A stretch of 64,000 nt of DNA from positions 22,148 through 86,147 of the forward strand of contig NW_021834582.1 in NCBI RefSeq assembly GCF_006345805.1, read 5' to 3'. Every line of letters starts with the position of its first letter. The stretch's first letter is position 1. This document shows, in pieces, positions 3,021 through 54,623 of the stretch. The DNA is from Octopus sinensis (Eukaryota). The position numbers were made by a program, and so were the translations under genes. A model generated the notes under the pieces. The model was given only the letters and a program-made list of their open reading frames with translations. It was not told the DNA's origin and did no database searches.

Positions 3021-6000
3021 ATGAACACTCATCGCCCTCCAAATCAAATGGCTCGAATGCAAAATTTTGATGCCTTTATTCGGACATTTGTCCACTGCCG
3101 GTCAATCTGCACTCTCCACGAACTAATAATCGCCTACAATAAAACGACAGGAGTCTCTGATTTCTCACAAAATCAAATTGGTCCTTTCACAACATACCCA
3201 ACAGTGATCGAATTATTCCACGTATTTCCCCTTCTTAATATTAGATCAATTATGGAATGCCCCATGTTGCTCAAATAACAACATCCGACGTCTTAAATTT
3301 CTTAGAAGAGTTCATTAAATTGGGAAATTTCAGAACTCAGTCAGTTTTTGACTTTGTTCAGTTTGTTGTCCATAAAACAAGGTCACAAAGTCCTTACGAA
3401 CTGGGTCTTGTGATTGCAAACTTCCCAGCTTTAATCACGGTGTATTCTTAACCAATTATTGTTAGTATTTAAATGCAAACAGAGGAAACCAACCCGAAAT
3501 TGGACTTTCATTTTTAAGACTGTTATGTGGAAGGTTAAAGACTTCAGTTATCCAATTGGAGGAGAGCTTCTTTAATGAAGGAGTGATAGACAAACTAAGG
3601 TTGTGGTATTCCACTCAGCCATTCAATGTGGTGGCTTGTGATGTTTTTGACAAACTGAGGAGGCTCATGCAGGCTGCTGTCACACAGGCTCCTCCTCGTA
3701 TTAGAACGATGGTATTTCTTTCCAACATTTTTCAGTTAAATGTGGCCAAAGATGCAATTGTTAAATTTGACCGGATCGTACGTTCTCATGAACTACTACA
3801 GCTTATTGTTCAATATGCAGTTTGTGTCAGTAAAAGTGACTTCGATGATGACTTTTTTGTACATTTTTTGTCAGCTCGGATAGACAAACCTGAACTTTCT
3901 AGGGGTATTGTGTCTTGTTTATGATTTTAGAATATTTAATTGATTTGATATCTAAGGAGGTGAAATTTACTGGTTTTTCTGCGTTTATAAAATGTTTGTC
4001 ACAATTGGAGAAGTCTCTAAAGAAAGAGTATTCCATCAAGTCTTTCGAACAACTCGGATTTGGGTCACTAACGTCATTTATGGATGAAAACGGAATTCAA
4101 ATGCCAGTAGTTGTCTATAATCAATATTTAGAAGGATACTCCGCCAGAAATTGAGGAGGAACATATCCCTCGAATACTCTTGGAGGGAATAAAGGAGATT
4201 GTACAGCAGAGAAAGGATATAAATCCAAATGTATGTTAACTTGTTTATTTAAGCCTGTTAGTGGACAAGTCATTGCAGATCAGTTGTGTTTAAGAGCAAG
4301 TCACAGTGGTGATGAGATTGACGAGCTGTTAATAAGTGTTGGATTGGTGATAAATTCTCTTCTGAAAGGAATCGCAGTGGTTCTGATAATCACGGGCTTT
4401 TAAATAAGTATAAATTATCCGACTATAGTCAATCACCTGTTGTTTATGAATGTGTTTTACTTGATAATGATAGGTTATTTATGATTTTATATAATCTAGT
4501 CTTTTGTCTATTATCACATGTAATTCGTATGTCAATCTACATGAATTGGTCTCCAATGTTATTGTAGAAATTGAGGAGTGTCCATACATGACTAATATTA
4601 TTGAGTATTGCTCTTGGCAAGTAAAATATCAGCAGAGTTTGGGTTCTTTCACAGATTTTGTACGTTTTCATGGTTTTTTGTATGATTATTCAGTAATAGA
4701 TGTGAATTGTCGGTTTATTGAGTCGTTCCCTCAAATTATATACAAAATTCCTAAAGAATATTCGTTTGGTCTATTGGAAAGTTCGTTACAAAAGTACAAC
4801 TCTCGTTTATTTTGTGCACACCTCATGTCATTCCTTGCCAGTCCCTCATGTCCCCAAAAAATAGAAATGTTAGTTAAAATAACCAAAAAGCACTTTTCTG
4901 AATTCGATAAGTACGAGGGAATCGAATTTGTATTGAAATGTATTGAGATACTCCCTTGGCGTACATGTGCCACACTCGCTTATAAGGTTGAGGATATTTG
5001 GTTGTCATTTTAGATAATTCTGTTCCCATTCATTGAATGTGGTCTTGCCGTGTTGGACGATTTATTTATCTTTGACTCTATAAATGTTCAACAAAGACTC
5101 AGACTTCGTATGATTTTAAGGATGTACAGACCGGACTACATTCCAATAGAACATATTAAAACACAAAAATACATTCGTTCTCCTACTAAAGAGTCCATCG
5201 TTATAGAAGAAATTGAAAAAAATCACATTGAAGAAGAATTTACAATTCAAACTGATTCACAAATAGAAACAAGTTGGTAGTATTTAAGTGGAGTTTAGGG
5301 ACTTTGGATACTCGTCGTGGATTGTCATTGGAAGAGTGGAGTCAAGAGGTACATGATTTGAGAAGAAGTCAATTTGGAATTGGAATTGATGTCTGTGATG
5401 AATTGACAATGAATGTTATTCAAATGCAGCAAAGAAGATTGTCTCGAACAATCCAACAGCTTTCATCTGTATGACCAGATTATTGATATTAAAAGGACTT
5501 GTATTCGAATGATATTCATTTTGTCCTGGAATTAATCCAAAATGCGGACGACAACCAATATGAGAACGACCGTCCTACAATTTGGTTTAAACTGTCTAAA
5601 AATATAGTTTGTTTATGTCTGAGACATTTTAGGTGGAAATATGGAATAATGAATTGGGTTTTACTGTGGGGGACTTGACAAGCATATGTGACGTGGCTTG
5701 TAGTAACAAGACAACGTCGATAGGTAGGAAAGGGATCGGGTTCAAGTCAGTATTCAAAGTAAGTGACTGTCCGCAAATCCACTCAAACAATCTCCATATT
5801 GAGTTTTCAAGTCAATCTGAGCCAATTGGTTATATTGTTCCTGGTTTGTTATCTATTTTTACAAGTCGAGTAGAATTGGTGGAGAACGTGCCATCACTCC
5901 CTAATACAAGGATTATCCTCCCGTTGAATAGAGATATTTCTGTTAAAGACAAGTTATGTGATGTTGATGGAAGTGTTCTGTTATTCCTTAACAAATTGAG

Positions 6001-9000
6001 GCATATTGTGGTACAATATGAGGTTATATGTGATTACTTAATATTTCAGAATGAAACAATTTCCGATTTTTATCGGAAAGATCAATCGGATAGACTTATA
6101 AGTATAATTTCGAAAGGACAGTCAGTGATTGGCTTGTTGTGAGTAAAGAAGTTGCACATAGTCGTACTACGACAATAAAATTAGCTTTTCCACTTGATGA
6201 TGGACGAGGTCAACAGTCGGTCTATGCCTTCCTTCCAGTTCGTAGCTATGGACTTCGATTTGCTCTCCACGGGGACTTTGATTTGTCGTCGTCTCGTGAG
6301 GACATTTTATGTGACAGTGCTTGGAATCAGTTTTTATTGGCTCATTTCCCTCGAATGTTTGTTTCTGATGGTTTTGAGTCGTTTTCGCGACATTATTCGG
6401 AACATGAATCTATTTTGAATTTTTTAAAATTTGTTCCGAGGAAATCTGAAGTCAATGTTGTATTCAATCAATGGCTTCTTCGATTTCGGTTTTGATTCGG
6501 GAAATGCCCTTAATTCCTGTCATTGGCCAGGAGGGTATGCAAAAAACAGTTGAATGTCTCTTATTTGATGATCTGAGACTTCATTCTGATTTTTCGCCAA
6601 CTTTTTGGTCTGATGTGGCCCAACTGTCACTTGTCGATGTCTGTTTTGCTGGTAAAGTAGACAAGACTTTGTTGTGGGAGTTAGGGGTGAGGCGATTCTC
6701 TGTTGATTTAGCACTTCAAGTGTCTAAATCATTGGCTATATGGCCAAAAGAAGTTATTCTTAGTTTGGTTTTAGATGCTTTTATTTTATAGATAATTTAT
6801 CTAATATTTGTGCTCTATTGGCTTCAATTTATCAGCATATCACTTCATTCGGACTTGTAAGTGGTCATATGATGAATTACGTCATGCAATTGCCTTTATT
6901 TCCATTAAAGGACTGCTCTCTTGTGTCTTTGAATGAAAAACGGGTTTATTTTCATGAGACATCCTCCCCTGAATTCGAAGAGGTCAATTCTTTTAAAAAT
7001 AAAGGTTCGTTTCTTTTTAAAGTATTTTTAGAGATCTTGTCTCCGTTTTTTGAAAATCTCAGTTTTATTCATTCGGATTTGTTTAAGGACTCTGATTCTG
7101 TAGTAACCTCGCAGGCACAGCAGCTTCTTATTTTACTTGGTATTGAATCTGTGTCGATGATTCGACTACTTAATTCTCATATTATACCCTCGATATCTCA
7201 TTTGAATTGTTTATTGGAATCAGATCGAGAACTGCTGGTGGCAATTACTGTTGTTTTTTTCATTTTATGGAAAAAGTCGTCCAATGAAGTTGATTTGAAA
7301 CAACTCCCAATATTGGATGAGAATAATCAACTAATCAGAGGAGAAATGAGAAGAAAAGTACACCTCCGACCATTGGAGGGGCAGTCAATTGTAAACGTGG
7401 GACAATTCGCAGACCAAATAAGTCCACTATATTTCAATAAACATTCCATATCCGTAAATTTGTCATTATTTGTTGATTTTTTGTCACATTGTGGCGTTTC
7501 TAATGGGTTTTATTTTGAAAGCAAAACAATTAATGTATTTTTATTTAATTTTATGTTAAGGGGGTCGTTGATTTTGAATGTCCTGAAGTGACTAGCATAT
7601 TCAAAACATGCCTTGAGTCGTCATCTCCTGAAAAACGTTTCAAGCTAAGAGCTCTTTTTGAGCATATTGGAGAAAATTGGATGACCATTTATTCTAAATA
7701 TTCTTATGTATGTTTTGCGTTGATATTACAACTACAGATGTCGGACAAGTCCAAGTTGAGCTCGTTTGGTAGTAGTTTGGTAGACGAGAGTTGGATTCCT
7801 GGTGTGAAATTACCAGTCGGGGCAGATGATGGGGAATGCCCTAATCTTGTTCTTATGAGGCCGAGTCGAGTGTTTCTTCCTTTGAAAGAAATTGAAGACA
7901 TGTTGGGGAATCACGTGGTATATTTGGAATGTCCAGCCAATTTGCCACAATGTAGGAATTTTTATGATTTTTGTGGAATTGCCTCTTCGATATCTGTTTC
8001 CATATTAATGTCTCTACTTTCCCTTTGGGGACAAAGAGAAACAGATGTACCTAAACCATTTCTATCCTCAATATCATCAATGACACTTATTTATTCATTT
8101 TTGATGATTAAGTGTCCGCTTGATGATATTCGAACGTTTTTTAGGAAAGTGTCGTGTATATTTGTCCCTAATTTGCCCTATGATGGTACTGATGTAGTGA
8201 GTGGTGTATTTCTGCATGTTGGAGAAGTGTGTTGTCACGCCAATGCTCAACTGCTGTCCAGATATGGACTTTGTTGTGGAATTTCGCTACAAACTGTATA
8301 TCCGAAGGTTCGAGTTTTGGGTCATAAATTCAAGCTTTTGAGTTTTTTTGGAATTTTGGGATTGGAGAATCGTCTTAGTGTTAGTGAATGTGTGTCTGTG
8401 ATTAAACGAATGGGAGTGAATGGAGAGTGTTGTCTCGATGATCTGGTGGTAGTCCTACCAGCGTTGTTTGACGCTGTCGCCAGTGAGGGAGTTACATGGG
8501 AGAGACTAAGAAATGATCTCCTCCATATTCCATTTATCCCTGTGATGGATGGGGGCGTATGTAAGGTTAATTTTTTGTTTTTTCTTTAAATAGTTGTCAG
8601 AAGTGTTCATTGGAGACTCCTCTGACATATTTCCATTTATCAAGATTGTGGTTAGACGTTTATATTCTGGAAATGAAAGTATTTTCGTTTTAGTGACTAT
8701 TGATATAGAAATTGAAGGGTTATTGACTAATCTTGGTGTCCCAAGACTGAGTCAAAGCATTTTTAGTGAAGTCGTTGGTATTGAGGGACCTGTGTTTGAA
8801 TTTGAATCTCTCTACGTTTACACAAATCGAGTTCTTCCATTAGTCCGACAGTATTTGGCGGGTAGATTCAAAAAAGAGATATCGAGGGTTGAGGACTGTG
8901 CTCGAAAGATACCGAATCTTCGTATTAAAGCTGTTTTTAGCATTTTGTAATTCAAAGACTTGTGGCTTCTCTGTGGAGTATAGACTGGTGGCACAGGGAG

Positions 9001-9832
9001 TCGACAAGCGTGTGGTCGTATCAGAGTTGGTTGGTGTGTCTACAATGGCGAATACTATTTATTGTCAAATGGATTCTATGGAGGCAGTGCACAACATTGA
9101 GGAATTTTACCGAAGGACAGACTGTGTAGAGTTATTGAGTGAGTTCAATAATGCACTTGCTGGTCACTTGGTTGACGATTCTGAAGTTAGAAAGGAACTA
9201 TCTCAGTTTATGGATAGTCTTATTCATAGAACTCCTGAGTAAAGTTGCGCTTATATAATTTCAGGATGGTTACTAATTCTTTGGTGGATGCTCCCTCCAT
9301 TTCTAATCGGACAATATCAGTAAAGCCTGAAAAACGTGGAATTGGAACGTCTTTGGTGTCTGGTGGGAATAAAAAGATGTCATTGCCTAATAAAAACGAG
9401 TATAAATTGCCTTCCTCTATTCCTGACGTGATGAGCAGTCAGAATGCCTTGGACATTGGGTATCGAGGAGAGTTGTTTGTATTTGAATATTTGATGGGGA
9501 AGCTGAAGGCAGGAGAGGACGATTTAGTGCATGTTGAATGGCTCAATCAAATGCACGAGTCCGGGCTGCCTTACGACTTTATTGTGGAGAAGAAAAATGA
9601 AGAATATTGCTATATTGAAGTCAAGTCCACAGCTTATGATAAGAAGGATTTTATGCCTATTTCTTTAAATGAGATAAAGACTGCTATTTCTATTGGATCT
9701 GCATATCATCTTTATCGTGTTTATGGATGTTCTGAACAGGGGGAACGTGAGCAAACAATGTCTCTTAGAATTATTGAAAATGTACAGGCTTCGTGCATTT
9801 ATAAGAAAATTCGTCTTTTCGCAGTCATTTAA
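3021..9832 (+). CDS. NO VEIN-like / sacsin-type GHKL ATPase with C-terminal DUF3883 PD-(D/E)XK nuclease domain (multi-exon)
   Basis: Spliced DLYSNDIHFVLELIQNADDN (~5496-5560), WNNELGFTVGDLTSICDV...IGRKGIGFKSVF, AFLPVRSYGLRFALHGDFDLSSSREDI, and C-terminal GYRGELFVFEYL...WLNQMHESGLPYDF...YIEVKST. ORF breaks are mostly 23-29 nt GT-AG introns; one apparent 1-nt frameshift near 6470. Confidence 0.85.
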
Positions 9833-9933
9833 TTTGTCAATATTTTTGTTTTTTCCAGTAAAAAAAACATAATTAGAAAGAAAGAAAAAAGTAAGCAATT
9901 GGGTGGCTAAGGGAATTGTCGAGGGCCTGAGGG

Positions 9934-12831
9934 TCAGCTCAACGATGCCGCGCTGCGTATTGAGTGGCAGTTTCCGCGGAGCACAGCAACCGAGATTCGC
10001 TGGAACAGCCAGCTCGTCTCCCTCCGGTCGTTTGTTTTTGTGGAGATTTTTCTACCAATGGCGGTGAGGAGTTGAGTCGCAGCCTTTCCGACGATTCCAG
10101 AGGTTTCGAAGGCGAGGGGGGCAAACTCAAAAGCGTCCGAAATACACCGGTATTTCGTCATCTTTGTCTCTTCAGCCAGCGCACTGGCGGAACCCGGGTT
10201 TGCGACAGTCCTGGGAAGCATTGTCGCCGAAAAAGAGTCGACACACGTGGCATCCCAAACCAGGGACTTGCCTTCCCTAAAAGGAAAGGTCGTCATCCCG
10301 TCGGGACGCTTGCCGTCGCTCCGGGAAAGGCCGACTGGCTCTAGGGTGGAAGGGAAACCAGCCGACTCTAGAGCCCTCCTCACAACGTCATTCAGATGAG
10401 TGTGACGGGGAATTCTCCCGGCACTCTTCTTACACGACAAGGCGTGCAAGCCGTTTGACGAAATTGAGGACCCGCACCGGCAAGGGTGGGGCTGGCAGAT
10501 GTCCAAACCCAATCGTAAGCTGATCCCAATCCGCAAGGATTCGTCGTCCAGTAGTAACCCCGTACTAGGAGTGGGGAGAGCTTTGAGCCAGTCACCCGTG
10601 TGCGGCTGACAGGCGCAGTTAAGGGTGGCCAGCTGGAGTTGGTCCGACTTGGAGCGAAGTTTTCGTAATGTGTTCGAGCAGAGAATTTCGTCCCAGCCCC
10701 TTTGAACTGAAGGGATCGTGGGAAAATCAAGGTCGAGTGAGCACCACGTACGGCATGCAGATGAGAATTCCGAGAGCTCATTAAGTTCGAGAGAGGGAAG
10801 TAGAACTGAGCAAACGGAATTCCTGAAAGCCGACATGGATGAGAGATAGCAGGGTAGGGCCAGGTCCGCACAAGAGCGGATCCCGATCCCCCCGAAGCGA
10901 GTTGGTAAACTGGCACGGGTAAAACCGTCACCAGTGAACCTCAAATTGAGGTGGAATGTTAGCGATTGGTGGACAAGATTATCGATTCTGGATAATGAGT
11001 CTGTGGCAGCGAAACACGGGGAGGAACGGAGAATATAGGTCAGTCTGGGGACGAAAAGAAAGTTCTTCAACAAGAAAAACGCAAGATGCGAGCCAAGCCC
11101 ACGGATCCGATCAGTGAGTAGTTTAATTTCGTCCCATTTAGACGATAAGGCATTTTCTATGCCTTCAGCGGAAATTGGAGAGCCCAAGATAACTAGATCG
11201 CTGGTGGGCGTTAGCCTTAACCCAACGATCAGGCTGCTGAGAGAGGAGAATGTGTTGCGGAGAGCGGCGGGGGCAAGAGAAATGTTTACGAGTTCGCATT
11301 TTTCGCCGTTAAGAGATAGTCCGATCTTGGAGAAACCGGAAGTGATTCTCTTAACGTCTTCCATAACGACCTCTGTAGGTCCACCGATCGTCACGTCGTC
11401 CAGGTACCAGAAGTTAACAGTGGAAGAAAGGTTCCGTGCAATGTGGTCAACGGAGAGGGCAAACAGCAATGGGCCCAGTGGGTCACCCTGCTGAATGCCG
11501 CATTCTGACATGATGATCTGATCATGGATCAGAAGGCAGCTTGGGGCAGAGTATGCCAGCTTTACAATTGGGAAGAGAACGGGGCAACGTGCCGAGACCA
11601 CTTCGAGCAGATGGTCCCGGCGGACGCAGTTGAATGCGTTGCTGACGTCCAGCTTCACGATGAACTTGCAGTCTTCTGGCTTTGACTGGACAAGTTGGCG
11701 AGTGCCGTGCGCGAGAATTTCGCAGGCACCTTGGACGCCGACACCGTACTGGAAAGGGAGAAACTCCAGACTCAGGGGGGGAACCACCCTGCGGGACATT
11801 ATCTTGGCCGAGAGTCTCCTGAAAACGTTACCGACCGCAATGGGCCTCACGCCGCCATCGGCTTTCGACAGGGCAATGAGGCCAGCAGAGAAAAGAAGAT
11901 CTCTGGCGACGGTTGGAATCTCGCCCGAGACAATGTGCGAACAAAGACGAGTGACAGAAGATAGCAGGTCTTTTCCGGATTCGTGGGTCAATGGGCTCAG
12001 GAGATCGCGTAGGTGGATGGGCTTTACACCGTCTATCCCGCCGCTGCTACTGGGCGCAAAAGACCCGAGAGCGGCCGAAACCTCAGACGAGGTTATCGGG
12101 TTGGACGGAGCCGAAACTAACGTCGGTGTTGCACGGAGGTCGGTGGGAGCTTGGGGGTGTTTGCTGCGGAGTTGATTCAGGACAGCATCACACCGAGGAG
12201 CCACAGAGGAGTTGGATGAAATTGCGCGCACTGCTCCAGAGATATCGCCCTGGAGGAGTTTGCTTCGGACTGCCCGGGAAAAGCGCAATTCTGCGAGACC
12301 GGGCCGTTTTGAAGGTGCCTCCTTACAAGGGGGCGTAAGAGAGACAGACAGCCAATCAGAGTTGAACTCTGAGTGGACGTAAGATGTACAACGGTCCTTA
12401 ATCCGCTGGGCAGAAGAAACGTGATTAGCAGCGCATGAGCGCATAGGAGAAGAATTGAGGCAAACGGGAAAGAAAGAGAACAGCTTGAACCAAGGGTCAG
12501 GAGCGCTGGAAGCCAGCGCCTGGTCGATCAAGGCTGCGAGGGACTTGGCCACAGTGGGTCTGGCCGATTTTGGAATCCTTACTGGGATGAATGATTCGCT
12601 TCGGAAAGCAGATAAGGATTTGAGGAATTGAGAAGGGGTAAAATGGCTCCCGGGAATTGGGGATATGCGTTTGGGTAGACCAAGGCAACTCGGGCACTTC
12701 CAGCATTGGATAACGGCCGAGCTGGCCCTGGAGAGCCCGACGCAGGATAGATGGAAGTACAGATCGCAAGAGGAGCACAAGCGGCCCTTCTTGCGGGAAT
12801 TGGATGATTTACAAGAGGAACAAGTTGCCAT
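9934..12831 (-). CDS. PHD finger - reverse transcriptase - CCHC - RLE endonuclease polyprotein
   Basis: N-terminal CxxC...CxxC....HxxC...WxCxxC (PHD-like). RT motifs GVRPIAVG, KLDVSNAFN, QQGDPLGPLLF, YLDD. Zn-knuckle CRCG...LHALSC. RLE RH..LND...KRPDG...WDAT...K..KY...PLAFETSG...FQRISVAVLRGN. Confidence 0.93.
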   Translation of the reverse strand: MATCSSCKSSNSRKKGRLCSSCDLYFHLSCVGLSRASSAVIQCWKCPSCLGLPKRISPIPGSHFTPSQFLKSLSAFRSESFIPVRIPKSARPTVAKSLAALIDQALASSAPDPWFKLFSFFPVCLNSSPMRSCAANHVSSAQRIKDRCTSYVHSEFNSDWLSVSLTPPCKEAPSKRPGLAELRFSRAVRSKLLQGDISGAVRAISSNSSVAPRCDAVLNQLRSKHPQAPTDLRATPTLVSAPSNPITSSEVSAALGSFAPSSSGGIDGVKPIHLRDLLSPLTHESGKDLLSSVTRLCSHIVSGEIPTVARDLLFSAGLIALSKADGGVRPIAVGNVFRRLSAKIMSRRVVPPLSLEFLPFQYGVGVQGACEILAHGTRQLVQSKPEDCKFIVKLDVSNAFNCVRRDHLLEVVSARCPVLFPIVKLAYSAPSCLLIHDQIIMSECGIQQGDPLGPLLFALSVDHIARNLSSTVNFWYLDDVTIGGPTEVVMEDVKRITSGFSKIGLSLNGEKCELVNISLAPAALRNTFSSLSSLIVGLRLTPTSDLVILGSPISAEGIENALSSKWDEIKLLTDRIRGLGSHLAFFLLKNFLFVPRLTYILRSSPCFAATDSLSRIDNLVHQSLTFHLNLRFTGDGFTRASLPTRFGGIGIRSCADLALPCYLSSMSAFRNSVCSVLLPSLELNELSEFSSACRTWCSLDLDFPTIPSVQRGWDEILCSNTLRKLRSKSDQLQLATLNCACQPHTGDWLKALPTPSTGLLLDDESLRIGISLRLGLDICQPHPCRCGSSISSNGLHALSCKKSAGRIPRHTHLNDVVRRALESAGFPSTLEPVGLSRSDGKRPDGMTTFPFREGKSLVWDATCVDSFSATMLPRTVANPGSASALAEETKMTKYRCISDAFEFAPLAFETSGIVGKAATQLLTAIGRKISTKTNDRRETSWLFQRISVAVLRGNCHSIRSAASLS

Positions 12832-12962
12832 GTAAAGAATGATGCAATAAAGCGAAAGAAAAAGGAAAAGGAACGATTAATAGAATGATAACGACAGGAT
12901 AGATTAATAGATGATAGAATAATGAAATGATAACAAAAATAATAAAAATAGAAACAGCTTTT

Positions 12963-12991
12963 TTTCTTTCTAATTATGTTTTTTTTACTGG

Positions 12992-13041
<50 letters not shown>
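12963..13041 (+). repeat. Inverted copy of the element's 3'-terminal 29 bp followed by A50
   Basis: tttctttctaattatgttttttttactgg (12963-12991) is the exact reverse complement of ccagtaaaaaaaacataattagaaagaaa (9855-9883), followed by 50 A. Confidence 0.9.
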
Positions 13042-13045
<4 letters not shown>

Positions 13046-16000
13046 GTTTTTTTACAGTTTAAAGTTTTATCAGTGTTTTCATTCATTTATTAAAAGAAAC
13101 GAGGTTATGTGAATTTAATTCGTAGATTATTTATATATTTAATGGTTTTCAGTTGTGGATATTGTTTATATGTTTGATAGTCGATAAATTAACATGCTGC
13201 TCGTAACCAAAAGTGTTCCAATTAAAATTAGTTACAATTTTTACACATTTATTTTTGGCACATGTACAGTTATATTTTTCAAAGAGGGTTGGTTCGAGTA
13301 AATATTAAAAAATCATATTGTGTATGCCAAATGTTATCTCTATTTTAACATTTGATTTTTAAACCTATAAAGAAGTCAAAATAAAATTAGGTTCATCTGA
13401 AAAGCCTGGTGTTTGATTTAGGACACTTCCTAAATTAACACCGCGATCATTAACGCAACAAGTTAATTTTTTCCGTACAGCGGACACCTTTAGAACGAGC
13501 GAAAAAAGGAAACGTACATAAGACACAGTTATGGAAGAAAAGCTATGTAGTTATTAATCCCCGATATAGAAGCCTGGCGGCTAAACGGGAAGCTATTATT
13601 GATTGCTCCAAGAGATCCCGAGGGCTGATGTTGATGGTGGGTTTGGAGAAAAAATATATTTTTATTATTATTAAAAGCATTTTATTATGATTTATGAAAA
13701 TAACACCAATCATTTTAGTGATTAATCAAAACACTTCTATTATTTTTATTTTTAATCAAAAATTTTTATGTCTCTAAATTTTAATTTAAAATGCAAGTAT
13801 CTATTCGATTATCGCTAATCTCAAAATTATTCACCAAAATTTTCTAGTTGATCGTACATCGCATTGCCCGATATTGAATTTCTGTCTTTGTTTGAATTCA
13901 ATTATTTAAAAAAAACAATTTATTTTCGAATTTACAGTCGGCAATTCATTATTTTGACTATTCTTAAATAAGACCGTTTAAAACGTATTACTGATGTCTT
14001 ATGTCAAGATAGATATCAGAATTATGTTTCATAAATTCATATTTTCATTTTTTAGACTATAATGTGACACATCCTGGTTTTAATTATTTATGTATCAATA
14101 GATGGTTGTATCAAATTACAGTTTACCCTCTATTGCTCGCCAATTCTATTGCTCGCCATTTCTATAACTCGCCACTTTTTTGGAAAAAATGCCATTTTTA
14201 CTAAGGAAATTCCATTGCTCGCCAAATTCTCTTACTCGCCACGTTTTAGTATTAAAAAATTAAAATTTATTATTAAAAAAATAATTTTTTCAAATATTTA
14301 TACCGCGTGTTTTTTTTGTAACATGAGGAAGTGCTCAAGATTATTTTATGATCAAAAAAGAGAAATTATAAATTATCTTATTGATAATTCTTCTCTAAGT
14401 CTAAGGCAGGGGTGGCCAACCGGTCGATCGCGGCATGTTTCGTGGTCGATCGCTCGATATATAAATTGCTAATTATTTTTTTTGTATTTAAATTATTATA
14501 AAAAAAATATTTATCAATATTAAAGTAAGTATTTTTCACGTGTCTTGTTATGAGGTGTAACAAAAAGTCCAAATCATATAAATTTAATGCCAAATGGGAA
14601 AAAGACTATATTTTTACGATGCACATGGAAAAATGCACATGTATGCTATGCAATAAAATCATTTCATTACCAAAAAGGGGAAATCTTTGTCGGCATTTTA
14701 ATTCTTTACATCCCGAGTTCAACAAACACTTTCCTTTAAATTCCTTATTACGGGAAGAGAAAGTTGAACAATTAAAAAAATCTTTTTTTTTCACAACATA
14801 CAATTTTGAAAAAGTCTATTAATTCGTCCAGATCTGCAACAATTGCATCATTGCGAGTGACTCGTCTCCTCGTAAAACACAAAAAACCTTTCACTGATGG
14901 GGAAATTTTAAAATCTTGTTTTTTGGAAGCTGCCGATTCACTATTTGATGGTATGAAAAATAAACAGGAAATTTCAAATTGCATCAAAGAGCTTCAGCTC
15001 TCAAAACAGTCAATTGTCAGAAGGGCTGAAAGCATTTCTGAAAATCTTCTTTCGCAGTTAAAAAAGGATCTTTACGCATGTTCGTGTTTTTCTCTACAGT
15101 TTGACGAATCAAACGATGCTATTGATGTCGCCCAACTATGTGTATTTTCCCGTTTAATCTTCCATGATCTAACTGTCAAGGAAGAGTTATTTGCTATTAT
15201 ACCTATGAAAGAAAGAACAACTGGTGAAAATATTTATAATTCTTTCAAAACGTTTTTGTTATCATTCGAATTATTACCGTTAATGAAGAAACTTGTATCC
15301 ATAACAACAGATCGAGCCCCTGCAATGATTGGGAATCAAAATGGATTTATTGCATTTTGTCGGAAAGATGAACATTTTCCGAAATTTTTATCATATCATT
15401 GCATCATTCAACAACATGCATTATGTGGGAAAATGTTAAATTTCAACTATGTTATGGAGACAACAGTTAAAATTATTAATTCCATCAGAGCCAAGCCCCT
15501 ACAAAGAAGATTATTTCGACTTTTTCTAGAACAAGTCGATGCAATCTATGGCGATCTACCTTTACATTGTGACATAAGATGGTTAAGCAAGGGATTAATT
15601 CTCCGTCGTTTCAGATAATTATTATCATACATTAAAGAATTTTCTAAAGAAAACAACAAGAATTGGCATTTTCTTGAAAATCCTGATTGGCTAATAAACT
15701 TGGCATTTTTAACCGATATTACCAGTAAACTGAATGAACTCAATTTAGAATTACAGGGAAAGAATAGATATATTATCGATATGATCAGTTCAATAAATGC
15801 TTTCATAATGAAGTTGGAATTATGGATATCTCAAATCAGAAAAGAAAATTTTACCCATTTTCCTAACATTGAAGATGAATTCACAAAACAACTTGTGAAT
15901 AAAAATCATTATGTCAATGAATTTGCTATGGTACTAGAAAAAATAATGAACGAGTTTAATAACAGATTTAGCGATTTCAAGAAAATTACTATATTATGCA

Positions 16001-16289
16001 GTTTCTTTGTTTCTCCGTTCATGGATGTAGACATCGAAAATATTTCAGAAGAATTTAGCAAGATTTTTGACGTTGATCGAAGAAAAAGTCAAATCTTAAT
16101 AATAAAATGGTATGGTGTGTGTCTGTCTGTGTGTCTGTCTGTCTGTGCACACCCACATTCAAATTGTTACAAACCAGATCAAATTGTCAAAACCTTCCCT
16201 TTTGTAGTTATTCGATAATGAGGCACAATAAAAGGTTGATATCCTCTAAGAACCTTCCTGTCAAAAAATTTTAATAAGAAAGAATATCC

Positions 16290-17072
16290 TCGATGATGAG
16301 GTCCCCCAAAACCTTCAAGTCAATTTTCTGCGTTTTTGTTAAAATGAACAACAAGAAAGTCCTCGACTCACATGATGTGGTCCCCCAAAACCTTCAAGCC
16401 AAAAAATTAAAAAAAATTATTTTCTGCGTTTTTGTTAAAATGAACAACAAGAAAGTCCTCGACTCACATGATGTGGTCCCCCAAAACCTTCAAGCCAAAA
16501 AATTAAAAAAAATTATTTTCTGCGTTTTTGTTAAAATGAACAACAAGAAAGTCCTCGACTCACATGATGTGGTCCCCCAAAACTTTCAAGCCAAAAAATT
16601 AAAAAAAATTATTTTCTGCGTTTTTGTTAAAATAACAACAAGAAAGTCCTCGACTCACATGATGTGGTCCCCCAAAACCTTCAAGCCAAAAAATTAAAAA
16701 AAATTATTTTCTGCGTTTTTGTTAAAATGAACAACAAGAAAGTCCTCGACTCACATGATGTGGTCCCTCAAAACCTTCAAGCCAAAAAATTAAAAAAAAT
16801 TATTTTCTGCGTTTTTGTTAAAATGAACAACAAGAAAGTCCTCGACTCACATGATGTGGTCCCTCAAAACCTTCAAGCCAAAAAATTAAAAAAAATTATT
16901 TTCTGCGTTTTTGTTAAAATGAACAACAAGAAAGTCCTCGACTCACATGATGTGGTCCCCCAAAACCTTCAAGCCAAAAATTAAAAAAAATATTTTCTTC
17001 TGCGTTTTTGTTAAAATGAACGACAAGAAAGTCCTCGACTCACATGATGAGGTCCTCCACAACCTTCAAGCC
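16290..17072 (+). repeat. 96-bp tandem repeat array (~8 units) inside Helitron copy 1
   Basis: Unit ttttctgcgtttttgttaaaatgaacaacaagaaagtcctcgactcacatgatgtggtcccccaaaaccttcaagccaaaaaattaaaaaaaatta recurs at 16324, 16420, 16516, 16612, ~16707, 16803, 16899 and ~16997. Confidence 0.95.
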
Positions 17073-17797
17073 TCGTGAGGCCATTAATTAGCTTAGCTAT
17101 CTTTTTTCGATGACATAAATTCTTTTTTGTTAAATTTTCGTTAAAAAAATAAAATAAAAGCTCTAATTGTTATCGACCATGAATAGACTGTGCAATTATC
17201 AGATTTTGAAAACCACTAAAAAGGAAAAAGCAAAAATTATTAGAGATTTACATAATTGATTCTTTTTAACTGCCGAAACTGACAAATTCGATTATGCTAC
17301 TGTTTAGATTTCTTAAAAGATAGAGGCAAATAAAATTTAAATTAGTCATGTAAATTTCAATTTGCCTATATTTAAATCTCCTTGATTTAACAGGCTTTAA
17401 TTTTTTTCCTTATAATACTACAAAGATGAAGCTGATTATCATTTTCTTTACCGAAACAGACAAGTTCGATTATGCTAAAGTTTCAATTCCTTTAAACATA
17501 GAGGCAATTAAGTATAATGGCTTTGATTGGATAATACACTTTACATAAATTTCACTAAATAAATTTACGTAGAAAATTTAATATAAATTACTGATTCGCG
17601 TTTACAAAATCATAAGAATGTCCTATAAAGAGAGATCTGAGAATGTTAACAAACAAGAGAATATGAACCATATAACAAAAAAAGAGAAACAAGGGAAGAT
17701 GTGCTTAAATGGTGAGGGAACTTAGACAACAGCTGAACAAGGTCAGGACTGCTGTTAGACTCAACTACGGGTAATAGAATTATGCATTCTAGGTTAA

Positions 17798-18590
17798 TTG
17801 TTTGGGATGAATGTACGATGGCTCATAAAGGCGCATTCAAGCAGTTGACCGAACATATAGAGATATCAAGAATTGTAGCGACCATTTGTTTGGGGGAGCA
17901 TTAGTTGTATTGGCAGGTGATTTTAGACAGACGCTGCCAATTATTCAAAGAGGGACGCCTGCGGATGAATTGAATGCCTGCCTCAAATCGTCATATTTGT
18001 GGACACACGTGAAAAAGGTAAGCTTAGATGTAAATGTACATGCACATTTACAAGGCGTTAATAGCATATTCCCACAAATCCTTCTAGATATTGGAAATGG
18101 GGCAATCACTTCAGAAATGCACGACCAGAAAATTAGGCTACCGGAAGAATTATGTATTTTCGTAGAAACAGCAGAAGAATTATTGAATGCCGTCTATTCC
18201 GAACTATCTGAACACTACGTGAATTTCGACTGGCTGCGTGAACGAGCTATATTAGCTCCACTTAATGATGAGGTACTTAATATAAATTTAGATTTATTAA
18301 TGAAAATCCCTGGCAGAGAAAGAATATATAAATCGGTCGACGTTATTATGGACCATGAAAGGGCCTGCGATAGATTTAAGAGACTACAATTTCCGCTGAA
18401 GATAAGTTTTGCTATGACAATAAACAAGGCCCAGGGACAGTCTTTAAAGGTAGTAGGCTTATTTTTAGAGAACGAGTGCTTTTCACATGGCCAGCTGTAT
18501 GTGGGGTGCTCAAGGGTAGGTAGAAGAGAAATTTATTTATATTTGCCAAGGATGGACGGACTGCAAACATCGTTTATCCACAGGCCTTAG
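17798..18590 (+). pseudogene. Helitron PIF1-family helicase fragment with internal deletion
   Basis: IVWDECTMAHK, FGGALVVLAGDFRQTLP, RAILAPLN, then jumps to RFKRLQFPLKISFAMTINKAQGQSL...FSHGQLYVGCSRV. Confidence 0.85.
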
Positions 18591-21249
18591 AATAAGGTTA
18601 TATCAAAGCAGGTCGCATTTATATATCTACATAAATTTATAGTTATTTAAGGAAACTGCGAGCGTAGCGAGCAGGGCCTCCGCAGGAGCTAGCTCGCAGT
18701 GAGCGAAGCGAACTGCTGAGCTAGTAGAAATTATAAATCTAAAAAATGACATCACTTTAAAATTACATTCAAATGTCAACATGTGGAAATTTATGTCTCA
18801 GGAAAAATATCCAATTTTGATTGATTCGTATCAACGAATTCTTTCATGCTTTGGAAGCACATATTTATCCGAAACATCATTTTCAAGTATGAAAATGATA
18901 AAATCTCAATACAGGACACGTTTAACGGATGACCATCTTGGGGATTGCATGAGAATAGCAATAAGCTTATACGAGCCAGAATTTGAAATAATCGCAAGTG
19001 AATTACAATGCCAAAAATCGCATTAATTTTTAATTGTAAAATAAAATTTTTGATATTAAAATATATAAGTCGATCTCCAAAAAATCGCAAAATGAAAAGT
19101 AGCTCGCCGGTGAAAAAGGTTGGCCACCCCTGGTCTAAGGCGTGTTTCAGAAATTTTTTCGTCGCGTTTCAAAAAATCAATTTCGAGACGTGCAATTAAC
19201 GATCTTAAATTGAACAAACAGAAGATTCTTGGAATTAATCCAATTTATGGGAGAAGTTCTCGTTTTTCGAAACTTAGATATTCAGCAATTGATTCTGAAA
19301 TCATTGCCTGGATAGATTACATGGAATCTATTGGAGTTTACCTCAATGATGAGATAATTTTGTCGAAAGCAACTGAAATTGCTGCGTTAAACGGTCTCTT
19401 CAAATTTAAAGCCAGTAAAGGATGGCTTGAAAAGTTCAAAAAAAGGCACAATGTAAAACTAAGAATTTTTCATGGTGAATTGGGATATACTGCGGATGAG
19501 TTCAAAGATCAAATCGAAGACTTTAAAAAAATTATCTCTTCTAAAATAAATGAATATGGTTCAGAAAATGTTTATAATGCCGACGAAACCGGCGTATTTT
19601 ACAAGACCATTCCATCAAAAAGTGTCTGCAGGAAACGCCGACCAGGACAAAAATTACTTAAAGATAGGTTTAACATTTTTAGCCAATTTTCAGATTTTCA
19701 TTAATGCTTTGCGCAAATATGACTGGATCCGATAAAAGAACTCCTTTGATGATCGGGCAGTTTAAGAAACCAAGGTGTTTTGAAGCTTGAACGTTGATGA
19801 ATATTTACAATACCGGAATTCTTCAAAGGCTTGGATGAACATGGAAATATTTAACGAATGGTTGTATAATTGGAACAAGACTCTCAAACAAAAACAAAAA
19901 AAGATACTTTTGGTTGTAGACCATTGTCCTTCGCATAGAATAACAATCGAATTAAGTATGATAGAAGTTTTATATTTACCAAAAAACACGACTACTGTGC
20001 TTCAACCGATGGATCAAGGAATCATTAGATCATTTAAATCTCATTTCAACAAATTTAAATTTAAACATATAATTGAACAAATAAACTACGGTGACGCAAC
20101 TATTGAATGCTATAAAAAATTAACCCAGAAAGATGCAATCTTATTTTCTTATCTAGCCTGGAAAGATGTGTCAGTGGATACAATATCAAAATGTTTTCAG
20201 CACGCCAAATGGGAAAACAGAATTGAAGAACCTATTATGGGAGACCATAAAATAAAAAATTTCGAACAAATTATAGAAAAATTAATGATCACAGATCCCA
20301 TAAAAGAGGAGGAGTTTATAGACTTTACGTACTCTGAAAATGACGAACTTCATGAATTTGTTCAAAACAATAACTATGAAAATAACGATGAAAATGCAAT
20401 TTTAGACAGTTCAATTACTGAAGATTGTGAAAGAAACAACTGTATTACACATCGAGATGCGATAAAATGTATTTCGGACCTCAAAAAATATTTTTCACAT
20501 GACGATAATTTTGATGTGAATATGCTAGAAAGATTATTAAAAATGCAAAAAAATATAGTGAAAAGATCATACAAAAAAACTATAAATGATTACTTTACTT
20601 AAAATTTTGGTTTTTTAAATAAATGTTTCGGCTATTTATTTAAATGTTTAGATAGTTAAAAATTATAGAAATTTTTTGTTGATAGAAAATAGGATATTGA
20701 TTATTTCTCTTACTCGCCAAATTCTCTTAGTCGCCAATTTTGGCTTGGTCCCAAAAATGGCGAGCAATAGAGGGAAGACTGTATAAGGGGTATTCTATTC
20801 CATGATTTCATTTTGAATTTATATCGGAAAAAATAAAAATCAATTTAAAACAATAAAAAGGTATCTATATTAATTATTTATTCAATACAGAGGAAAATCT
20901 GCCCAATTTTTGCTTTTTCATTCAAATGTCGCCAAGAAATAAAAGTACGTTAAATTATATTTTTTGTAAATAATTCATATATTTTAAATTATAAAAACTG
21001 GCAGTCGAGACGATAGAAATCCGGGTCGAGCATAAATTATTATTAGACTAACGATGCCATCGATTGTGACATGTGGAACACAATAAGTCAGATCCCTGGA
21101 CAACCTTATCATTTCGTTCTATTTCGAGCTGGCTTCCATAACACTTCGAGATCCTCTTCCTTTTTAAGCTGCTTCAAAATGATTTCGAAATTCTCTTCAA
21201 ATACAATTAAGAATGCTATCCTTATCTAAACTGTGGTGCGTGTTTAAGT

Positions 21250-33578: not shown

Positions 33579-34766
<1,188 letters not shown>

Positions 34767-47599: not shown

Positions 47600-48650
47600 C
47601 TCGATGATGAGGTCCTTAAAACCTTCCCGCCAAAAAAATCAAAAAATTTTTTTCTGCATTTTGGTTAAAATAAACAACTACGATGTCCTCGACTTACATG
47701 ATGAGGTCCTTAAAACCTTCCCCCCAAAAAAATTAAAAAAAAAATTTCTGCATTTTGGTTAAAATGAACAACTACGATGTCCTCGACTTACATGATGAGG
47801 TCCTTAAAACCTTCCCCCCAAAAAAATTAAAAAAAAATTTCTGCATTTTGGTTAAAATGAACAACTACGATGTCCTCGACTTACATGATGAGGTCCTTAA
47901 AACCTTCCCCCCAAAAAAAAATTAAAAAAAAATTTCTGCATTTTGGTTAAAATGAACAACTACGATGTCCTCGACTTACATGATGAGGTCCTTAAAACCT
48001 TCCCCCCAAAAAAAAATTAAAAAAAAATTTCTGCATTTTGGTTAAAATGAACAACTACGATGTCCTCGACTTACATGATGAGGTCCTTAAAACCTTCCCC
48101 CCAAAAAAAATTAAAAAACAAATTTCTGCATTTTGGTTAAAATGAACAACTACGATGTCCTCGACTTACATGATGAGGTCCTTAAAACCTTCCCCCCAAA
48201 AAAAATTAAAAAACAAATTTCTGCATTTTGGTTAAAATGAACAACTACGATGTCCTCGACTTACATGATGAGGTCCTTAAAACCTTCCCCCCAAAAAAAA
48301 TTAAAAAAAAATTTTCTGCATTTTGGTTAAAATGAACAATTACGATGTCCTCGACTTACATGATGCGGTCCTTAAAACCTCCCGCCAAAAAATCAAAAAA
48401 TTATTTTCTGCATTTTGGTTAAAATGAACAACTACGATGTCCTCGACTTACATGATGAGGTCCTTAAAACCTTCCCCCCCAAAAAAAATTAAAAAAAAAT
48501 TTCTGCATTTTGGTTAAAATGAACAACTACGATGTCCTCGACTTACATGATGAGGTCCTTAAAACCTCCCGCCAAAAAATCAAAAAATTATTTTCTGGAT
48601 TTTGATTAAAATGAACAACGTGAATGTCCTCGACATTCATGATGAGGTCC
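47600..48650 (+). repeat. 92-95-bp tandem repeat array (~11 units) inside Helitron copy 2
   Basis: tttctgcattttggttaaaatgaacaactacgatgtcctcgacttacatgatgaggtccttaaaacc... starts at 47651, 47745, 47838, 47933, 48028, 48123, 48218, 48313, 48405, 48500 and 48592. Confidence 0.95.
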
Positions 48651-49094
48651 ATTAAAACCTTTGAGGCAAAAATCTCACGTTCAAGAATATCCTTGATGAA
48701 AACGACAGCGAGAATATAAACAATGATGAACTCCCAATTATTTGCGATAAAGAAATTCAATTCATCTTGAGATTTTCTCTTTAAAATTAAATGCATATAT
48801 CATTATCGACCATGAATCAAAATTAAAGCTATTATCATATTTGACTTTGACAGAATGTGCAATTACAGATTGCACGACCTTGAATAGAGTGTGCAATTAA
48901 CAGATTTTGAAAAACACTTTGATAGTTGAAACCACATTAGCACAATCATTAACACAATTTACCACCAATTGACAGCGCAATCAGAAGAATTTGCGTTAAA
49001 ATATTAACTATTTATTTAAGTTTTTCGTAAAGATAGAATTTATTTTCGGTATGCCTCTTTTTTCCTAATATTTTTTATTATTCAAAAATAATTT

Positions 49095-52949: not shown

Positions 52950-53270
52950 TATATGCTTGAAAGAAAGTTCATAAACCACTGCAAGAAAACCAAAAAATAT
53001 ATCATCGTCTAAAAGATTTCTAATTAAATCAGAAACTTTAAATCCATAAAAACCAAGGCTTTCATTAAATAATTAAAACAAGATTTTAAATTCATTAACT
53101 TGGGTTTGTGCACGACTTTTTTGGTACACCAATCAGTTAGAAATTTTCTATAAACTTGTCTTATAGAGGCTTCTGCTAATAATTTACTGTCAAATTTAAT
53201 AAATATATCATCCAGTCACTTTATTCCAATTCGTTATGTAATACTTCCTGAAATGTAACGAAAAATTAAA

Positions 53271-53560
53271 TTTTTAATTTTAAAGAGCAATCTTACGTAG
53301 TAGTGTCCTCAATAATTCAAATTATTGTATTAATTAAAAATTTCTAAATAATATTTTATTTGTTAAATTTTATCTATATAATTACTTTAGATTTTTAATA
53401 GTAAAATGTAAATTATTTGAAAACTATATTTTTAAAGCATTAACAAATCCTTCCAGTTATTGAATTACTTAATTTTTTCCATGAGCCTACCAAACCTAAC
53501 TTCTTTGGTCCAATTACCCTTTAAAATTCTAATTTTTGTGTCTGCTTAGCAGGCTTATTT
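53271..53560 (+). repeat. Interspersed direct repeat block A (290 bp), second copy at 58077-58366
   Basis: Colinear, highly similar AT-rich sequence from tttttaatttta..gagcaatcttacgtagtag to aggcttattt. Confidence 0.9.
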
Positions 53561-53575
53561 TTTTAAAGTAATTTT

Positions 53576-53920: not shown

Positions 53921-53978
53921 CTTTAATTTTTTGTATATTTTCGTACTTTTTTTTTATTACGAAAAGTGTTCGAAAGCT

Positions 53979-54618: not shown

Positions 54619-54623
54619 AAAGG

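What the first reader, a model, noticed from the sequence alone, without database searches (positions are those of the whole stretch)
9844..13052. CRE retroelement with its 3' end at both termini: inverted 29-bp repeat, poly(A) on the antisense strand, candidate TSD
Seen: the ORF runs on the minus strand and its 3' UTR ends in ...tttctaattatgttttttttactgg at 9855. The identical 29-mer reappears inverted at 12963-12991 beyond the ORF's 5' end, followed by A50 on the plus strand. The 11-mer ttttgtttttt flanks both ends (9844-9854, 13042-13052). Established: ordinary TPRT gives one 3' end with the tail on the sense strand, and twin-priming inversions do not duplicate the 3' end. Inference: either both nicks of one staggered cut were primed by two element RNAs (a full-length and a ~30-nt copy joined head to head), or this family has true terminal inverted repeats/panhandle RNA reminiscent of inverted pseudo-LTR arrangements. 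I do not know either as a described feature of CRE-clade elements.
Basis: partly seen in the sequence, partly recalled or inferred. Interest (0 to 1): 0.8.

Follow-up and report, generated by a model that had tools for sequence, protein, structure and literature searches.

The report
Octopus LINE copy primed from both nicks
A young jumping gene in an octopus genome carries a short backwards copy of its own tail plus a 50-A tract at its head. This is most likely a one-off insertion accident in which both cut DNA ends started copying element RNA, not a built-in feature of the family.

Summary
The 29-mer sits at 9855-9883 and inverted at 12963-12991. A50 is at 12992-13041, and the 11-bp duplication ttttgtttttt flanks the whole.

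The host is Octopus. The element is a non-LTR retrotransposon with a single 965-aa ORF holding a PHD-like finger, RT, CCHC and a restriction-like endonuclease (RLE). It is 'CRE/SLACS-like' by name only.

A second copy of the same family, 99.8% identical with an intact ORF, lies in an O. sinensis contig (L003 4634-7716). It has its own 13-bp TSD, no terminal inverted repeat and a 5' UTR motif shared with a sister family. A family-wide TIR or panhandle is therefore rejected.

The window copy lacks that 93-nt 5' end. In its place are 86 nt of filler, the inverted tail piece and A50.

Sister families in other octopus loci show the same class of accident inside single TSDs: a classical twin-priming inversion (L006), and a full-length copy preceded by a 133-nt inverted duplicate of its own ORF (L007).

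Best reading (about 0.6): an extreme twin-priming variant, with the second nick primed at the poly(A) end of element RNA. Main rival: two successive insertions at one site. Interest is modest, because this is a variant of a known process.

The parts
9844..9854 (.). Left copy of the 11-bp target-site duplication ttttgtttttt. In the model it is the 3' end of the plus-strand primer (P1) for the long cDNA.
   Evidence: Identical 11-mer at 13042-13052; 4 occurrences on the + strand in 64 kb.
9855..9883 (-). Last 29 nt of the 3' UTR of the direct copy (...tttctttctaattatgttttttttactgg on the minus strand). No A tail follows; the T-rich primer abuts it. This stretch is absent from the second genomic copy (L003).
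9884..9933 (-). Part of the 3' UTR shared with the L003 copy.
9934..12831 (-). Intact ORF of 965 aa: PHD-like finger (aa 4-49), RT (aa 323-516), CCHC (C784, C786, H796, C800) and RLE motifs (R809 H810 N814, E831, R842 P843 D844, D860, K890, K893).
   Evidence: It differs by 2 aa from the L003 copy.
12832..12873 (-). 42 nt of 5' UTR shared with the L003 copy. Identity to that copy ends at 12873.
12874..12958 (.). Filler of about 86 nt (12874-12959, the last base being ambiguous with the inverted piece). It replaces the family's canonical first 93 nt. It is A-rich on the + strand and has imperfect internal duplications that include the core/filler boundary (12869-12884 vs 12896-12911; 12875-12892 vs 12917-12934). 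It has no significant similarity to the canonical 5' UTRs or to anything else held.
12959..12991 (+). Inverted copy of the element's 3' end: an exact 29-mer at 12963-12991, and 33 nt if one TTTC unit is allowed to be missing. In the model it is the cDNA made from the minus-strand nick (P2).
12992..13041 (+). A50: the poly(A) tail belonging to the inverted 3'-end piece (T50 on the ORF strand).
13042..13052 (.). Right copy of the 11-bp target-site duplication.

Best explanation
This is a single aberrant insertion of a young Octopus RLE-type, CRE-like non-LTR retrotransposon. It is an extreme variant of twin priming.

The element's endonuclease made two nicks 11 bp apart.

- The plus-strand 3' end (...ttttgtttttt-3') paired with the start of the poly(A) tail of element RNA. 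It was extended through the 3' UTR and ORF to 42 nt upstream of the ATG. That is why no A tail is visible at 9855.
- The minus-strand 3' end (...aaaaaacaaaa-3') cannot pair with poly(A). It was extended from the very end of a poly(A) tail of element RNA, either a second molecule or the same one re-copied with strand displacement. The product was T50 plus about 33 nt of the 3' UTR, after which synthesis stopped.
- The two cDNA 3' ends were then joined with 86 nt of filler and filled in. The result is one 11-bp TSD around a nearly full-length copy with an inverted tail piece and A50 at its head.

Shown: the anatomy, the single TSD, the absence of the inverted repeat in a sister copy, and the same class of structure in sister families. 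Inferred: the order of events, the number of RNA molecules, and the origin of the filler.

The copy keeps an intact ORF but has lost the conserved 5' terminal motif, so it is probably not an autonomous source copy (inference).
For: (1) The whole composite is enclosed by one exact 11-bp duplication. That length sits in the range seen for relatives: 13 bp (L003 young copy), 11 bp (L004), 15 bp (L006), 12 bp (L007).

(2) The inverted repeat is not a family feature. L003 4634-7716 is 99.8% identical over about 3.0 kb, with 5 substitutions and an intact ORF differing by 2 aa. It has no terminal inverted repeat.

(3) That copy's extra 93 nt at the 5' end carry CACGTTGTTGTTGTTGTGGTG plus a T-run. These align significantly with the 5' UTR of a different family in L004 (local score 62 against shuffles of 21 +/- 3.3, 0 of 500 reaching it). 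The window filler does not align (26 against 23 +/- 4). The window copy is therefore 5'-truncated with filler.

(4) Related Octopus families end in poly(A): A13, A16, A35. The element RNA is therefore expected to be polyadenylated, as the inverted piece shows.

(5) Second-nick priming occurs in this group.
- L006 has aa 232->162 inverted at 9570-9779, next to aa 251-935 direct, inside a 15-bp TSD. This is classical twin priming.
- L007 has a full-length direct copy (8848-11983) preceded by a 133-nt, 99% inverted duplicate (8715-8847) of its own ORF segment 10615-10747. The two are joined through CACGTTA microhomology at the element's 5' motif, and all of it lies inside one 12-bp TSD AATTAAAATACT. 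Two ordinary insertions do not easily account for that structure.

(6) The inverted piece shares 8 further nt (c-tttttt-c) with the core 3' UTR beyond the 29-mer. It therefore derives from element RNA, not an unrelated RNA.

(7) The pure A50 and the 29/29 identity fit the youth of the long copy.

(8) Precedents in L1:
- a reciprocal end extended by reverse transcription of a different mRNA (bioRxiv 10.1101/2024.12.14.628481).

(9) For R2, another RLE element, a second protein subunit makes the second nick (PMC13486585).
Against: Only two copies of this family could be obtained. The normal 3' end is therefore not settled: the L003 copy lacks both the 29-mer and a tail. I read that as internal priming by its A-rich primer on the U-rich 3' UTR. 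The alternative, that the 29-mer is a 3' transduction, is not excluded.

The inverted piece has one TTTC unit fewer than the direct copy. That requires slippage or a second source RNA.

The T6 just left of the inverted piece can equally be read as a 6-bp TSD of a separate second insertion.

The 86-nt filler has no identified template.

No reads, empty site or allele could be examined.
Confidence: 0.6

Rival explanations
1. Two independent, successive insertions of the same family at the same nucleotide.

First, a severely 5'-truncated copy (about 26 nt plus A50, + orientation) with the 11-bp TSD, its 5' junction resolved through tttttt/aaaaaa microhomology.

Later, a nearly full-length copy in the opposite orientation nicked at ttttgtttttt/c. 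This one gave a 6-bp TSD (tttttt at 9849-9854 and 12960-12965).
For: The sequence fits base for base. This model explains the T6 at 12960-12965 without invoking loss of a TTTC unit.

In L005 a CRE-like copy lies about 20 nt from the A-rich tail of another CRE-like fragment, so insertion next to older tails does occur.
Against: The four TSDs seen in this group share no consensus, so the elements are not site-specific. Two hits at one nucleotide are therefore a priori very unlikely.

Both pieces are very young (pure A50, 29/29 identity, long copy 99.8% identical to its sister).

The second event would have a 6-bp TSD, against 11-15 bp in the relatives.

L007 shows that an inverted duplicate plus a full-length copy can arise inside one TSD, in a case where a two-insertion reading does not work.
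Confidence: 0.15
2. Double priming as in the best explanation, but the 29-mer plus A50 belongs to an unrelated polyadenylated RNA X. Both nicks would have primed on X, and the plus-strand cDNA would have switched to the element RNA after 29 nt. On this reading the family's true 3' end is ...cttacttttttc, as in L003.
For: The 29-mer begins exactly where the L003 copy ends. The filler next to the inverted piece contains an AATAAA and could be upstream sequence of X.
Against: The homology between the two arms continues 8 nt into the shared core 3' UTR (c-tttttt-c).

Relatives have poly(A) tails whereas the L003 copy has none, which suggests that L003, not the window, has the atypical 3' end.

This model needs an extra template switch.
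Confidence: 0.07
3. The structure was inherited. On this reading a source copy already carried it, and a transcript starting upstream was retrotransposed as a whole.
For: None directly. It cannot be excluded with two copies.
Against: The RNA would have to start exactly at the first U of a U50 tract that abuts the TSD. The model only moves the problem back one generation. The 29-mer occurs nowhere else in about 155 kb of Octopus sequence held.
Confidence: 0.05
4. Assembly artefact: a false join or collapse at the long homopolymer.
For: A50 is a classic trouble spot for assemblers, and its length is uncertain.
Against: The exact 11-bp TSD directly after the A tract, and the contiguity of both unique flanks, are not expected from a chimeric join.
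Confidence: 0.05
5. The family has true terminal inverted repeats, or a panhandle or pseudo-LTR-like design.
For: Only the window copy itself.
Against: The L003 sister copy, the L004 copy and three further relatives have no terminal inverted repeat. There is no GIY-YIG domain and no Rfam ribozyme. The window copy lacks the conserved 5' motif.
Confidence: 0.03

Closest known systems
Twin priming of LINE-1 (Ostertag and Kazazian 2001, cited)
   Same: Both 3' ends of the staggered target break prime reverse transcription. The product has an inverted piece on the 5' side and one TSD around everything.
   Different: In classical twin priming the second primer anneals inside the RNA. The inverted piece then comes from upstream of the direct piece, so the 3' end is not duplicated and only one poly(A) is present. 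Here the second primer copied the poly(A) tail and the last ~33 nt, and the direct copy is almost full-length. The enzyme is also an RLE-type protein, not an APE-type ORF2p.
Twin-priming variants and reciprocal-end reverse transcription in L1 (bioRxiv 10.1101/2024.08.27.596794; 10.1101/2024.12.14.628481)
   Same: [quoted passage not shown]
   Different: The two-tail cases described there join two different chromosomal breaks (translocation bridges) in tumours. Here both tails belong to one 11-bp staggered cut, in a germline copy of an invertebrate RLE element.
R2 integration mechanism (PMC13486585; PMC6895275)
   Same: A single-ORF protein with RT, CCHC and RLE. For R2, a second protein subunit makes the second-strand nick, which would put a second RT (and possibly a second RNA) at that nick.
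   Different: R2 is strictly specific for the 28S rDNA site and has no poly(A)-dependent priming. The octopus elements insert at varied AT-rich sites and end in poly(A). The RT-region similarity to R2 is only E ~1e-6.
CRE clade sensu stricto (CRE1/CRE2, SLACS, CZAR of trypanosomatids)
   Same: One ORF with RT and a C-terminal RLE. One homologue (P0025, 41% identical) is named 'Retrotransposable element SLACS protein' by its source. CRE-type LINEs are reported almost only in cephalopods among molluscs (PMC10294476).
   Different: Classical members insert at one position of spliced-leader genes. The octopus copies have unrelated target sites. No phylogeny was made here.
Penelope-like elements with pseudo-LTRs
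   Same: Terminal repeats in direct or inverted order around an RT ORF.
   Different: PLEs have a GIY-YIG nuclease, and pLTRs are a regular family feature. Here the nuclease is RLE and the repeat is confined to one copy.

Membership tests
RLE-bearing non-LTR retrotransposons (R2/CRE/NeSL/R4/HERO group) | Reverse transcriptase domain of the non-LTR type in a single long ORF | tested here: met
   Pfam RVT_1 E=1.5e-17, aa 323-516. The best solved-structure matches are R2 proteins.
RLE-bearing non-LTR retrotransposons (R2/CRE/NeSL/R4/HERO group) | C-terminal CCHC motif followed by a PD-(D/E)XK restriction-like endonuclease; no APE domain | tested here: met
   Invariant in 16 aligned homologues: C784, C786, H796, C800, R809, H810, N814, E831, R842, P843, D844, D860, K890, K893. 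No APE family hit in Pfam. Reading these residues as the RLE motif rests on established knowledge of R2.
RLE-bearing non-LTR retrotransposons (R2/CRE/NeSL/R4/HERO group) | Insertion by TPRT: target-site duplication, 5' truncations, no LTRs | tested here: met
   TSDs of 11-15 bp in five copies; 5'-truncated fragments with poly(A) tails.
CRE clade sensu stricto (CRE1/2, SLACS, CZAR) | Site-specific insertion into spliced-leader RNA genes | tested here: not met
   The target duplications are ttttgtttttt, gttacgtgaaaaa, aatgtaacaat, ataaa[c/t]attggtgag and aattaaaatact. They share no common site.
CRE clade sensu stricto (CRE1/2, SLACS, CZAR) | Phylogenetic placement of the RT with CRE/SLACS/CZAR | not tested
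   The only pointers are a source-given name 'SLACS' on homologue P0025 and a RepeatMasker-style report of CRE types in cephalopods (PMC10294476). No reference sequences were available for a tree.
Twin-priming product | Inverted piece on the 5' side and direct piece on the 3' side, enclosed by a single TSD | tested here: met
Twin-priming product | The inverted piece derives from RNA upstream of the start of the direct piece (no duplication of the 3' end, one poly(A)) | tested here: not met
   The inverted piece is the last ~33 nt plus the poly(A) tail, and the direct copy also holds that sequence. Hence 'variant', not a classical case.
Twin-priming product | Microhomology at the junction of the two cDNAs | tested here: inconclusive
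   86 nt of filler lies between them in the window. The L007 analogue does use 7-nt microhomology.
Element with genuine terminal inverted repeats (DNA transposon/MITE, PLE with inverted pLTR) | The inverted termini are present in all or most intact copies | tested here: not met
   Absent from the 99.8%-identical L003 copy and from the L004, L007, L002 and second L003 relatives.

The most novel reading that the evidence does not exclude
Octopus CRE-like RLE retrotransposons may routinely use both nicked strands as primers for reverse transcription. Of the five copies with resolved ends examined here, three carry an inverted piece inside a single TSD (window, L006, L007). The window copy shows that the second nick can start at the very end of a poly(A) tail without base pairing.

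If this is frequent genome-wide, it would be natural in vivo evidence that the second subunit recruited for second-strand nicking in RLE elements is itself a loaded, RT-competent RNP. The inverted pieces would then record where second-strand synthesis normally begins.
Probability: 0.2. Interest if true: 0.55.

Novelty: new variant of a known kind. Interest (0 to 1): 0.35.

Why it matters
The copy itself is a by-product with no likely function. It still shows three things:

- An RLE-type LINE can undergo twin priming.
- The second 3'-OH can start on a poly(A) end without complementarity.
- The tail-primed cDNA can still run almost full length.

How the second strand of RLE-LINE insertions is made remains an open question (PMC6895275, PMC13486585). 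A genome-wide census of such 'double-ended' copies in cephalopods would give in vivo data on it.

For annotation, the case is a warning that an inverted terminal repeat on a single LINE copy should not be taken as a family feature.

Tried and rejected
(1) Family TIR or panhandle. Rejected by the L003 sister copy.

(2) MITE or DNA transposon with 29-bp TIRs into which the LINE inserted. Rejected because A50 lies between the 'TIR' and the TSD, the left arm is contiguous with the 3' UTR, and the 29-mer has no other copy in about 155 kb.

(3) Penelope-like element or ribozyme. There is no GIY-YIG domain and no Rfam hit on either copy.

(4) Fold-back of the RNA poly(A) on the U8 tract as self-primer. 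This predicts arms separated by the A tract, not by the whole element.

(5) The long cDNA switching onto its own 5' part. This predicts ...actgg followed by aaaaaacaaaaatattg (the flank), not A50 followed by the TSD.

(6) The filler as a diverged 5' UTR, or as a copy of nearby sequence. Similarity is no better than shuffles, and no match of 15 nt or more was found anywhere.

(7) Searches for more copies of the family.
- The exact protein is not on record.
- Two protein searches gave nothing above 64% identity.
- Five Octopus loci plus one non-Octopus locus were fetched, and only L003 held a copy.
- A metagenome scan with a 3' UTR 21-mer gave 0 hits.

(8) Empty site. There is no paralogous site in the held sequence. 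The search with the flanking sacsin-like ORF returned nothing at E<=1e-10, so no orthologous locus could be fetched.

(9) TAATTA as a conserved 3' UTR motif that would make the 29-mer canonical. It is present in 7 of 16 3' regions against 8.5% of background windows, but at variable positions, so the support is weak.
Full report
**What is there**

The window is AT-rich (flanks 33% G+C). It holds a 3.2-kb island of 54% G+C at 9855-13041. On the minus strand an intact ORF runs 12831->9934 (965 aa).

- The 29-mer CCAGTAAAAAAAACATAATTAGAAAGAAA occurs only at 9855-9883 (+) and 12963-12991 (-). None is expected by chance.
- 12992-13041 is exactly A50, the only homopolymer of 12 nt or more in the window.
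- ttttgtttttt abuts both ends, at 9844-9854 and 13042-13052. This 11-mer occurs only five times in 128 kb of both strands.
- With one TTTC unit removed, the inverted homology extends to 33/37 nt and runs 8 nt into the 3' UTR core.

**What the element is**

The ORF has a PHD-like finger (below Pfam's cut-off) and an RVT_1 domain. Its best solved relatives are R2 proteins.

In an alignment with 15 homologues the CCHC and RH..N / E / RPD / D / K..K residues of a restriction-like endonuclease are invariant. It is therefore an RLE-type, single-ORF non-LTR retrotransposon.

The nearest named proteins are uncharacterised Octopus sinensis proteins (64% over 62%). One barnacle protein is named 'SLACS' by its source. 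CRE-type LINEs have been reported almost only in cephalopods among molluscs (PMC10294476).

The window shares several other repeats with O. sinensis contigs, so the host is Octopus. The insertion lies 12 nt after the stop of a sacsin/NO VEIN-like ORF, in the opposite orientation.

**A second copy settles the family question**

By chance, the locus fetched around an O. sinensis homologue holds another copy of the same family (L003 4634-7716).
- It matches window 9881-12880 at 99.77%. True identity ends at 12873, with five substitutions.
- Its ORF is intact and differs by 2 aa.
- It has its own 13-bp TSD GTTACGTGAAAAA (4621-4633 and 7717-7729) and no terminal inverted repeat.
- At its 3' end it stops exactly where the window's 29-mer begins, and it has no tail.
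- At its 5' end it has 93 nt that the window lacks.

Those 93 nt contain CACGTTGTTGTTGTTGTGGTG followed by a T-run. They align significantly with the 5' UTR of a different CRE-like family in L004 (score 62 against 21 +/- 3.3 for shuffles). A similar motif heads the L007 element. The L003 copy therefore shows the normal 5' end.

The window copy is 5'-truncated. In place of the normal 5' end it carries 86 nt of filler (12874-12959).
- The filler has no significant similarity to those UTRs or to anything else held.
- It contains imperfect internal duplications that include the core/filler boundary.

A built-in TIR or panhandle is thus rejected.

**Tails and targets in the group**

Other CRE-like copies and fragments in the Octopus loci end in poly(A) after short 3' UTRs:
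- T16 at L003 18490-18505;
- A13 at L004 12835-12847, with TSD aatgtaacaat;
- T35 at L006 16890-16924.

The element RNA is therefore expected to be polyadenylated, which is what the inverted piece shows.

The TSDs are 11-15 bp and unrelated in sequence, so the elements are not site-specific.

At each 3' junction the primer shows short complementarity to the template.
- The T-rich window primer fits the start of the poly(A) tail.
- The A-rich L003 primer fits the U-rich 3' UTR. This may explain that copy's missing 29 nt by internal priming (inference).

**The same class of accident in sister families**

L006 holds a classical twin-priming product. Amino acids 232->162 lie inverted at 9570-9779, directly followed by aa 251-935 in direct orientation, inside a 15-bp TSD.

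L007 is closer to the window.
- A full-length element (8848-11983) is preceded by a 133-nt, 99% inverted duplicate (8715-8847) of its own ORF segment 10615-10747.
- The junction uses the 7-nt microhomology CACGTTA at the element's 5' motif.
- One 12-bp TSD AATTAAAATACT (8703-8714 and 11984-11995) encloses everything.

An internal 133-nt fragment without a 3' end is not an ordinary insertion. The L007 composite is therefore best read as a single event in which the second nick primed and the tail-primed cDNA nevertheless ran to the RNA's 5' end.

**Mechanism proposed for the window**

Two nicks were made 11 bp apart.

P1 is the plus-strand end ...ttttgtttttt-3'. It paired with the first A's of the tail and copied the RNA to 42 nt before the ATG.

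P2 is the minus-strand end ...aaaaaacaaaa-3'. It was extended from the tip of a 50-nt tail through about 33 nt of 3' UTR. The template was either a second RNA or the same RNA with strand displacement.

The two cDNA ends were then joined with filler and filled in.

This is twin priming taken to its extreme position on the template. Related L1 findings:
- A reciprocal end extended on a different mRNA has been described (bioRxiv 10.1101/2024.12.14.628481).

For R2, a second protein subunit makes the second nick (PMC13486585). That makes a second loaded RNP at that nick plausible (inference).

**Rivals**

The main rival is two successive insertions: first a 26-nt+A50 stub with the 11-bp TSD, then the long copy with a 6-bp TSD (tttttt). 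It fits the bases and explains the T6 without slippage. Against it:
- it needs two young insertions of a non-site-specific family at one nucleotide;
- it needs an unusually short TSD for the second event;
- L007 shows that such composites arise in one event.

I give it 0.15. Lesser rivals are an unrelated poly(A) RNA as the template of the 29-mer (0.07), inheritance from a source locus (0.05), misassembly at the A tract (0.05) and a family TIR (0.03).

**Limits**

Only two copies of the family could be obtained, because the tools hold no searchable Octopus genome. The exact protein is not on record, and no near-identical protein fragments exist in the collection. A metagenome scan found nothing. 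No empty site could be found. No reads were available.

The canonical 3' end of the family therefore rests on indirect arguments.

**Verdict**

The 'double priming' reading is supported and the 'family TIR' reading is refuted.

This is a new variant of a known process (twin priming), seen in an RLE-type LINE of a cephalopod. It is a curiosity with some mechanistic value, not a new kind of element. Interest 0.35.

Noticed in passing
L007 8703-11995 (O. sinensis VCDQ01006093.1): A full-length CRE-like element is preceded by a 133-nt, 99% inverted duplicate of its own internal ORF segment. The two are joined through CACGTTA microhomology, inside one 12-bp TSD AATTAAAATACT. This looks like twin priming with complete duplication of the second cDNA.
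   Followed up: yes
L006 9558-12059 (O. sinensis VCDQ01013100.1): A classical twin-priming 5' inversion in a CRE-like, RLE-type element: aa 232->162 inverted, then aa 251-935 direct, with a 15-bp TSD ATAAA[C/T]ATTGGTGAG.
   Followed up: partly
L003 7682-7702 (-), L004 9705-9725 (+), L007 ~8842-8900: A conserved 5'-terminal motif CACGTTGTTGYTGTTGTGGTG followed by a T-rich run is shared by different CRE-like families of Octopus. It is a candidate promoter or protein-binding site. It gave no Rfam hit.
   Followed up: partly
window 9934-12831 versus flanks: The element's ORF is 54% G+C in a genome region of 33% G+C. Two copies are 99.8% identical with intact ORFs, so the family looks recently active.
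   Followed up: partly
window 4504-9832 (+): A series of ORFs in different frames has Sacsin and NO VEIN C-terminal domains, ending 12 nt before the insertion. This is either a split or broken sacsin-like gene or an intron-containing one. The last ORF found no homologue at E<=1e-10.
   Followed up: partly
window 33579-34727 (-): A complete actin (Pfam Actin E=3e-147) lies in one uninterrupted 382-aa ORF. It may be an intronless gene or a retrocopy. No long A/T tract lies nearby.
   Followed up: no
window 14806-20602 and 51756-60474: A cluster of other mobile-element remnants:
- hAT-like (DUF4371; zf-BED/Dimer_Tnp_hAT at 58664-60474)
- PIF1 helicase fragment, Helitron-like (17886-18590)
- pogo/Tc5-like (HTH_Tnp_Tc5 19120-19704; DDE_1 19787-20602)
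- DDE_3 (51756-52409)
- another RT fragment (56743-57582)
   Followed up: no
window 16323-17072, 47604-48661, 62663-62833: Tandem arrays of a ~95-nt unit (7.8, 11.2 and 1.8 copies). The arrays at 47604-48661 and 62663-62833 also match O. sinensis loci L005 and L006 at about 85-95%, so they look like a dispersed satellite-bearing repeat.
   Followed up: no
L005 12512-14957: A short 3' fragment of one CRE-like family (aa 932-964 plus a short A run) lies about 20 nt upstream of a 5'-truncated copy of another family. That copy is flanked by a ~24-bp near-perfect duplication aaacttcaaatgtc[a/g]tctgcaaaa. This suggests insertion next to older A-rich tails.
   Followed up: partly
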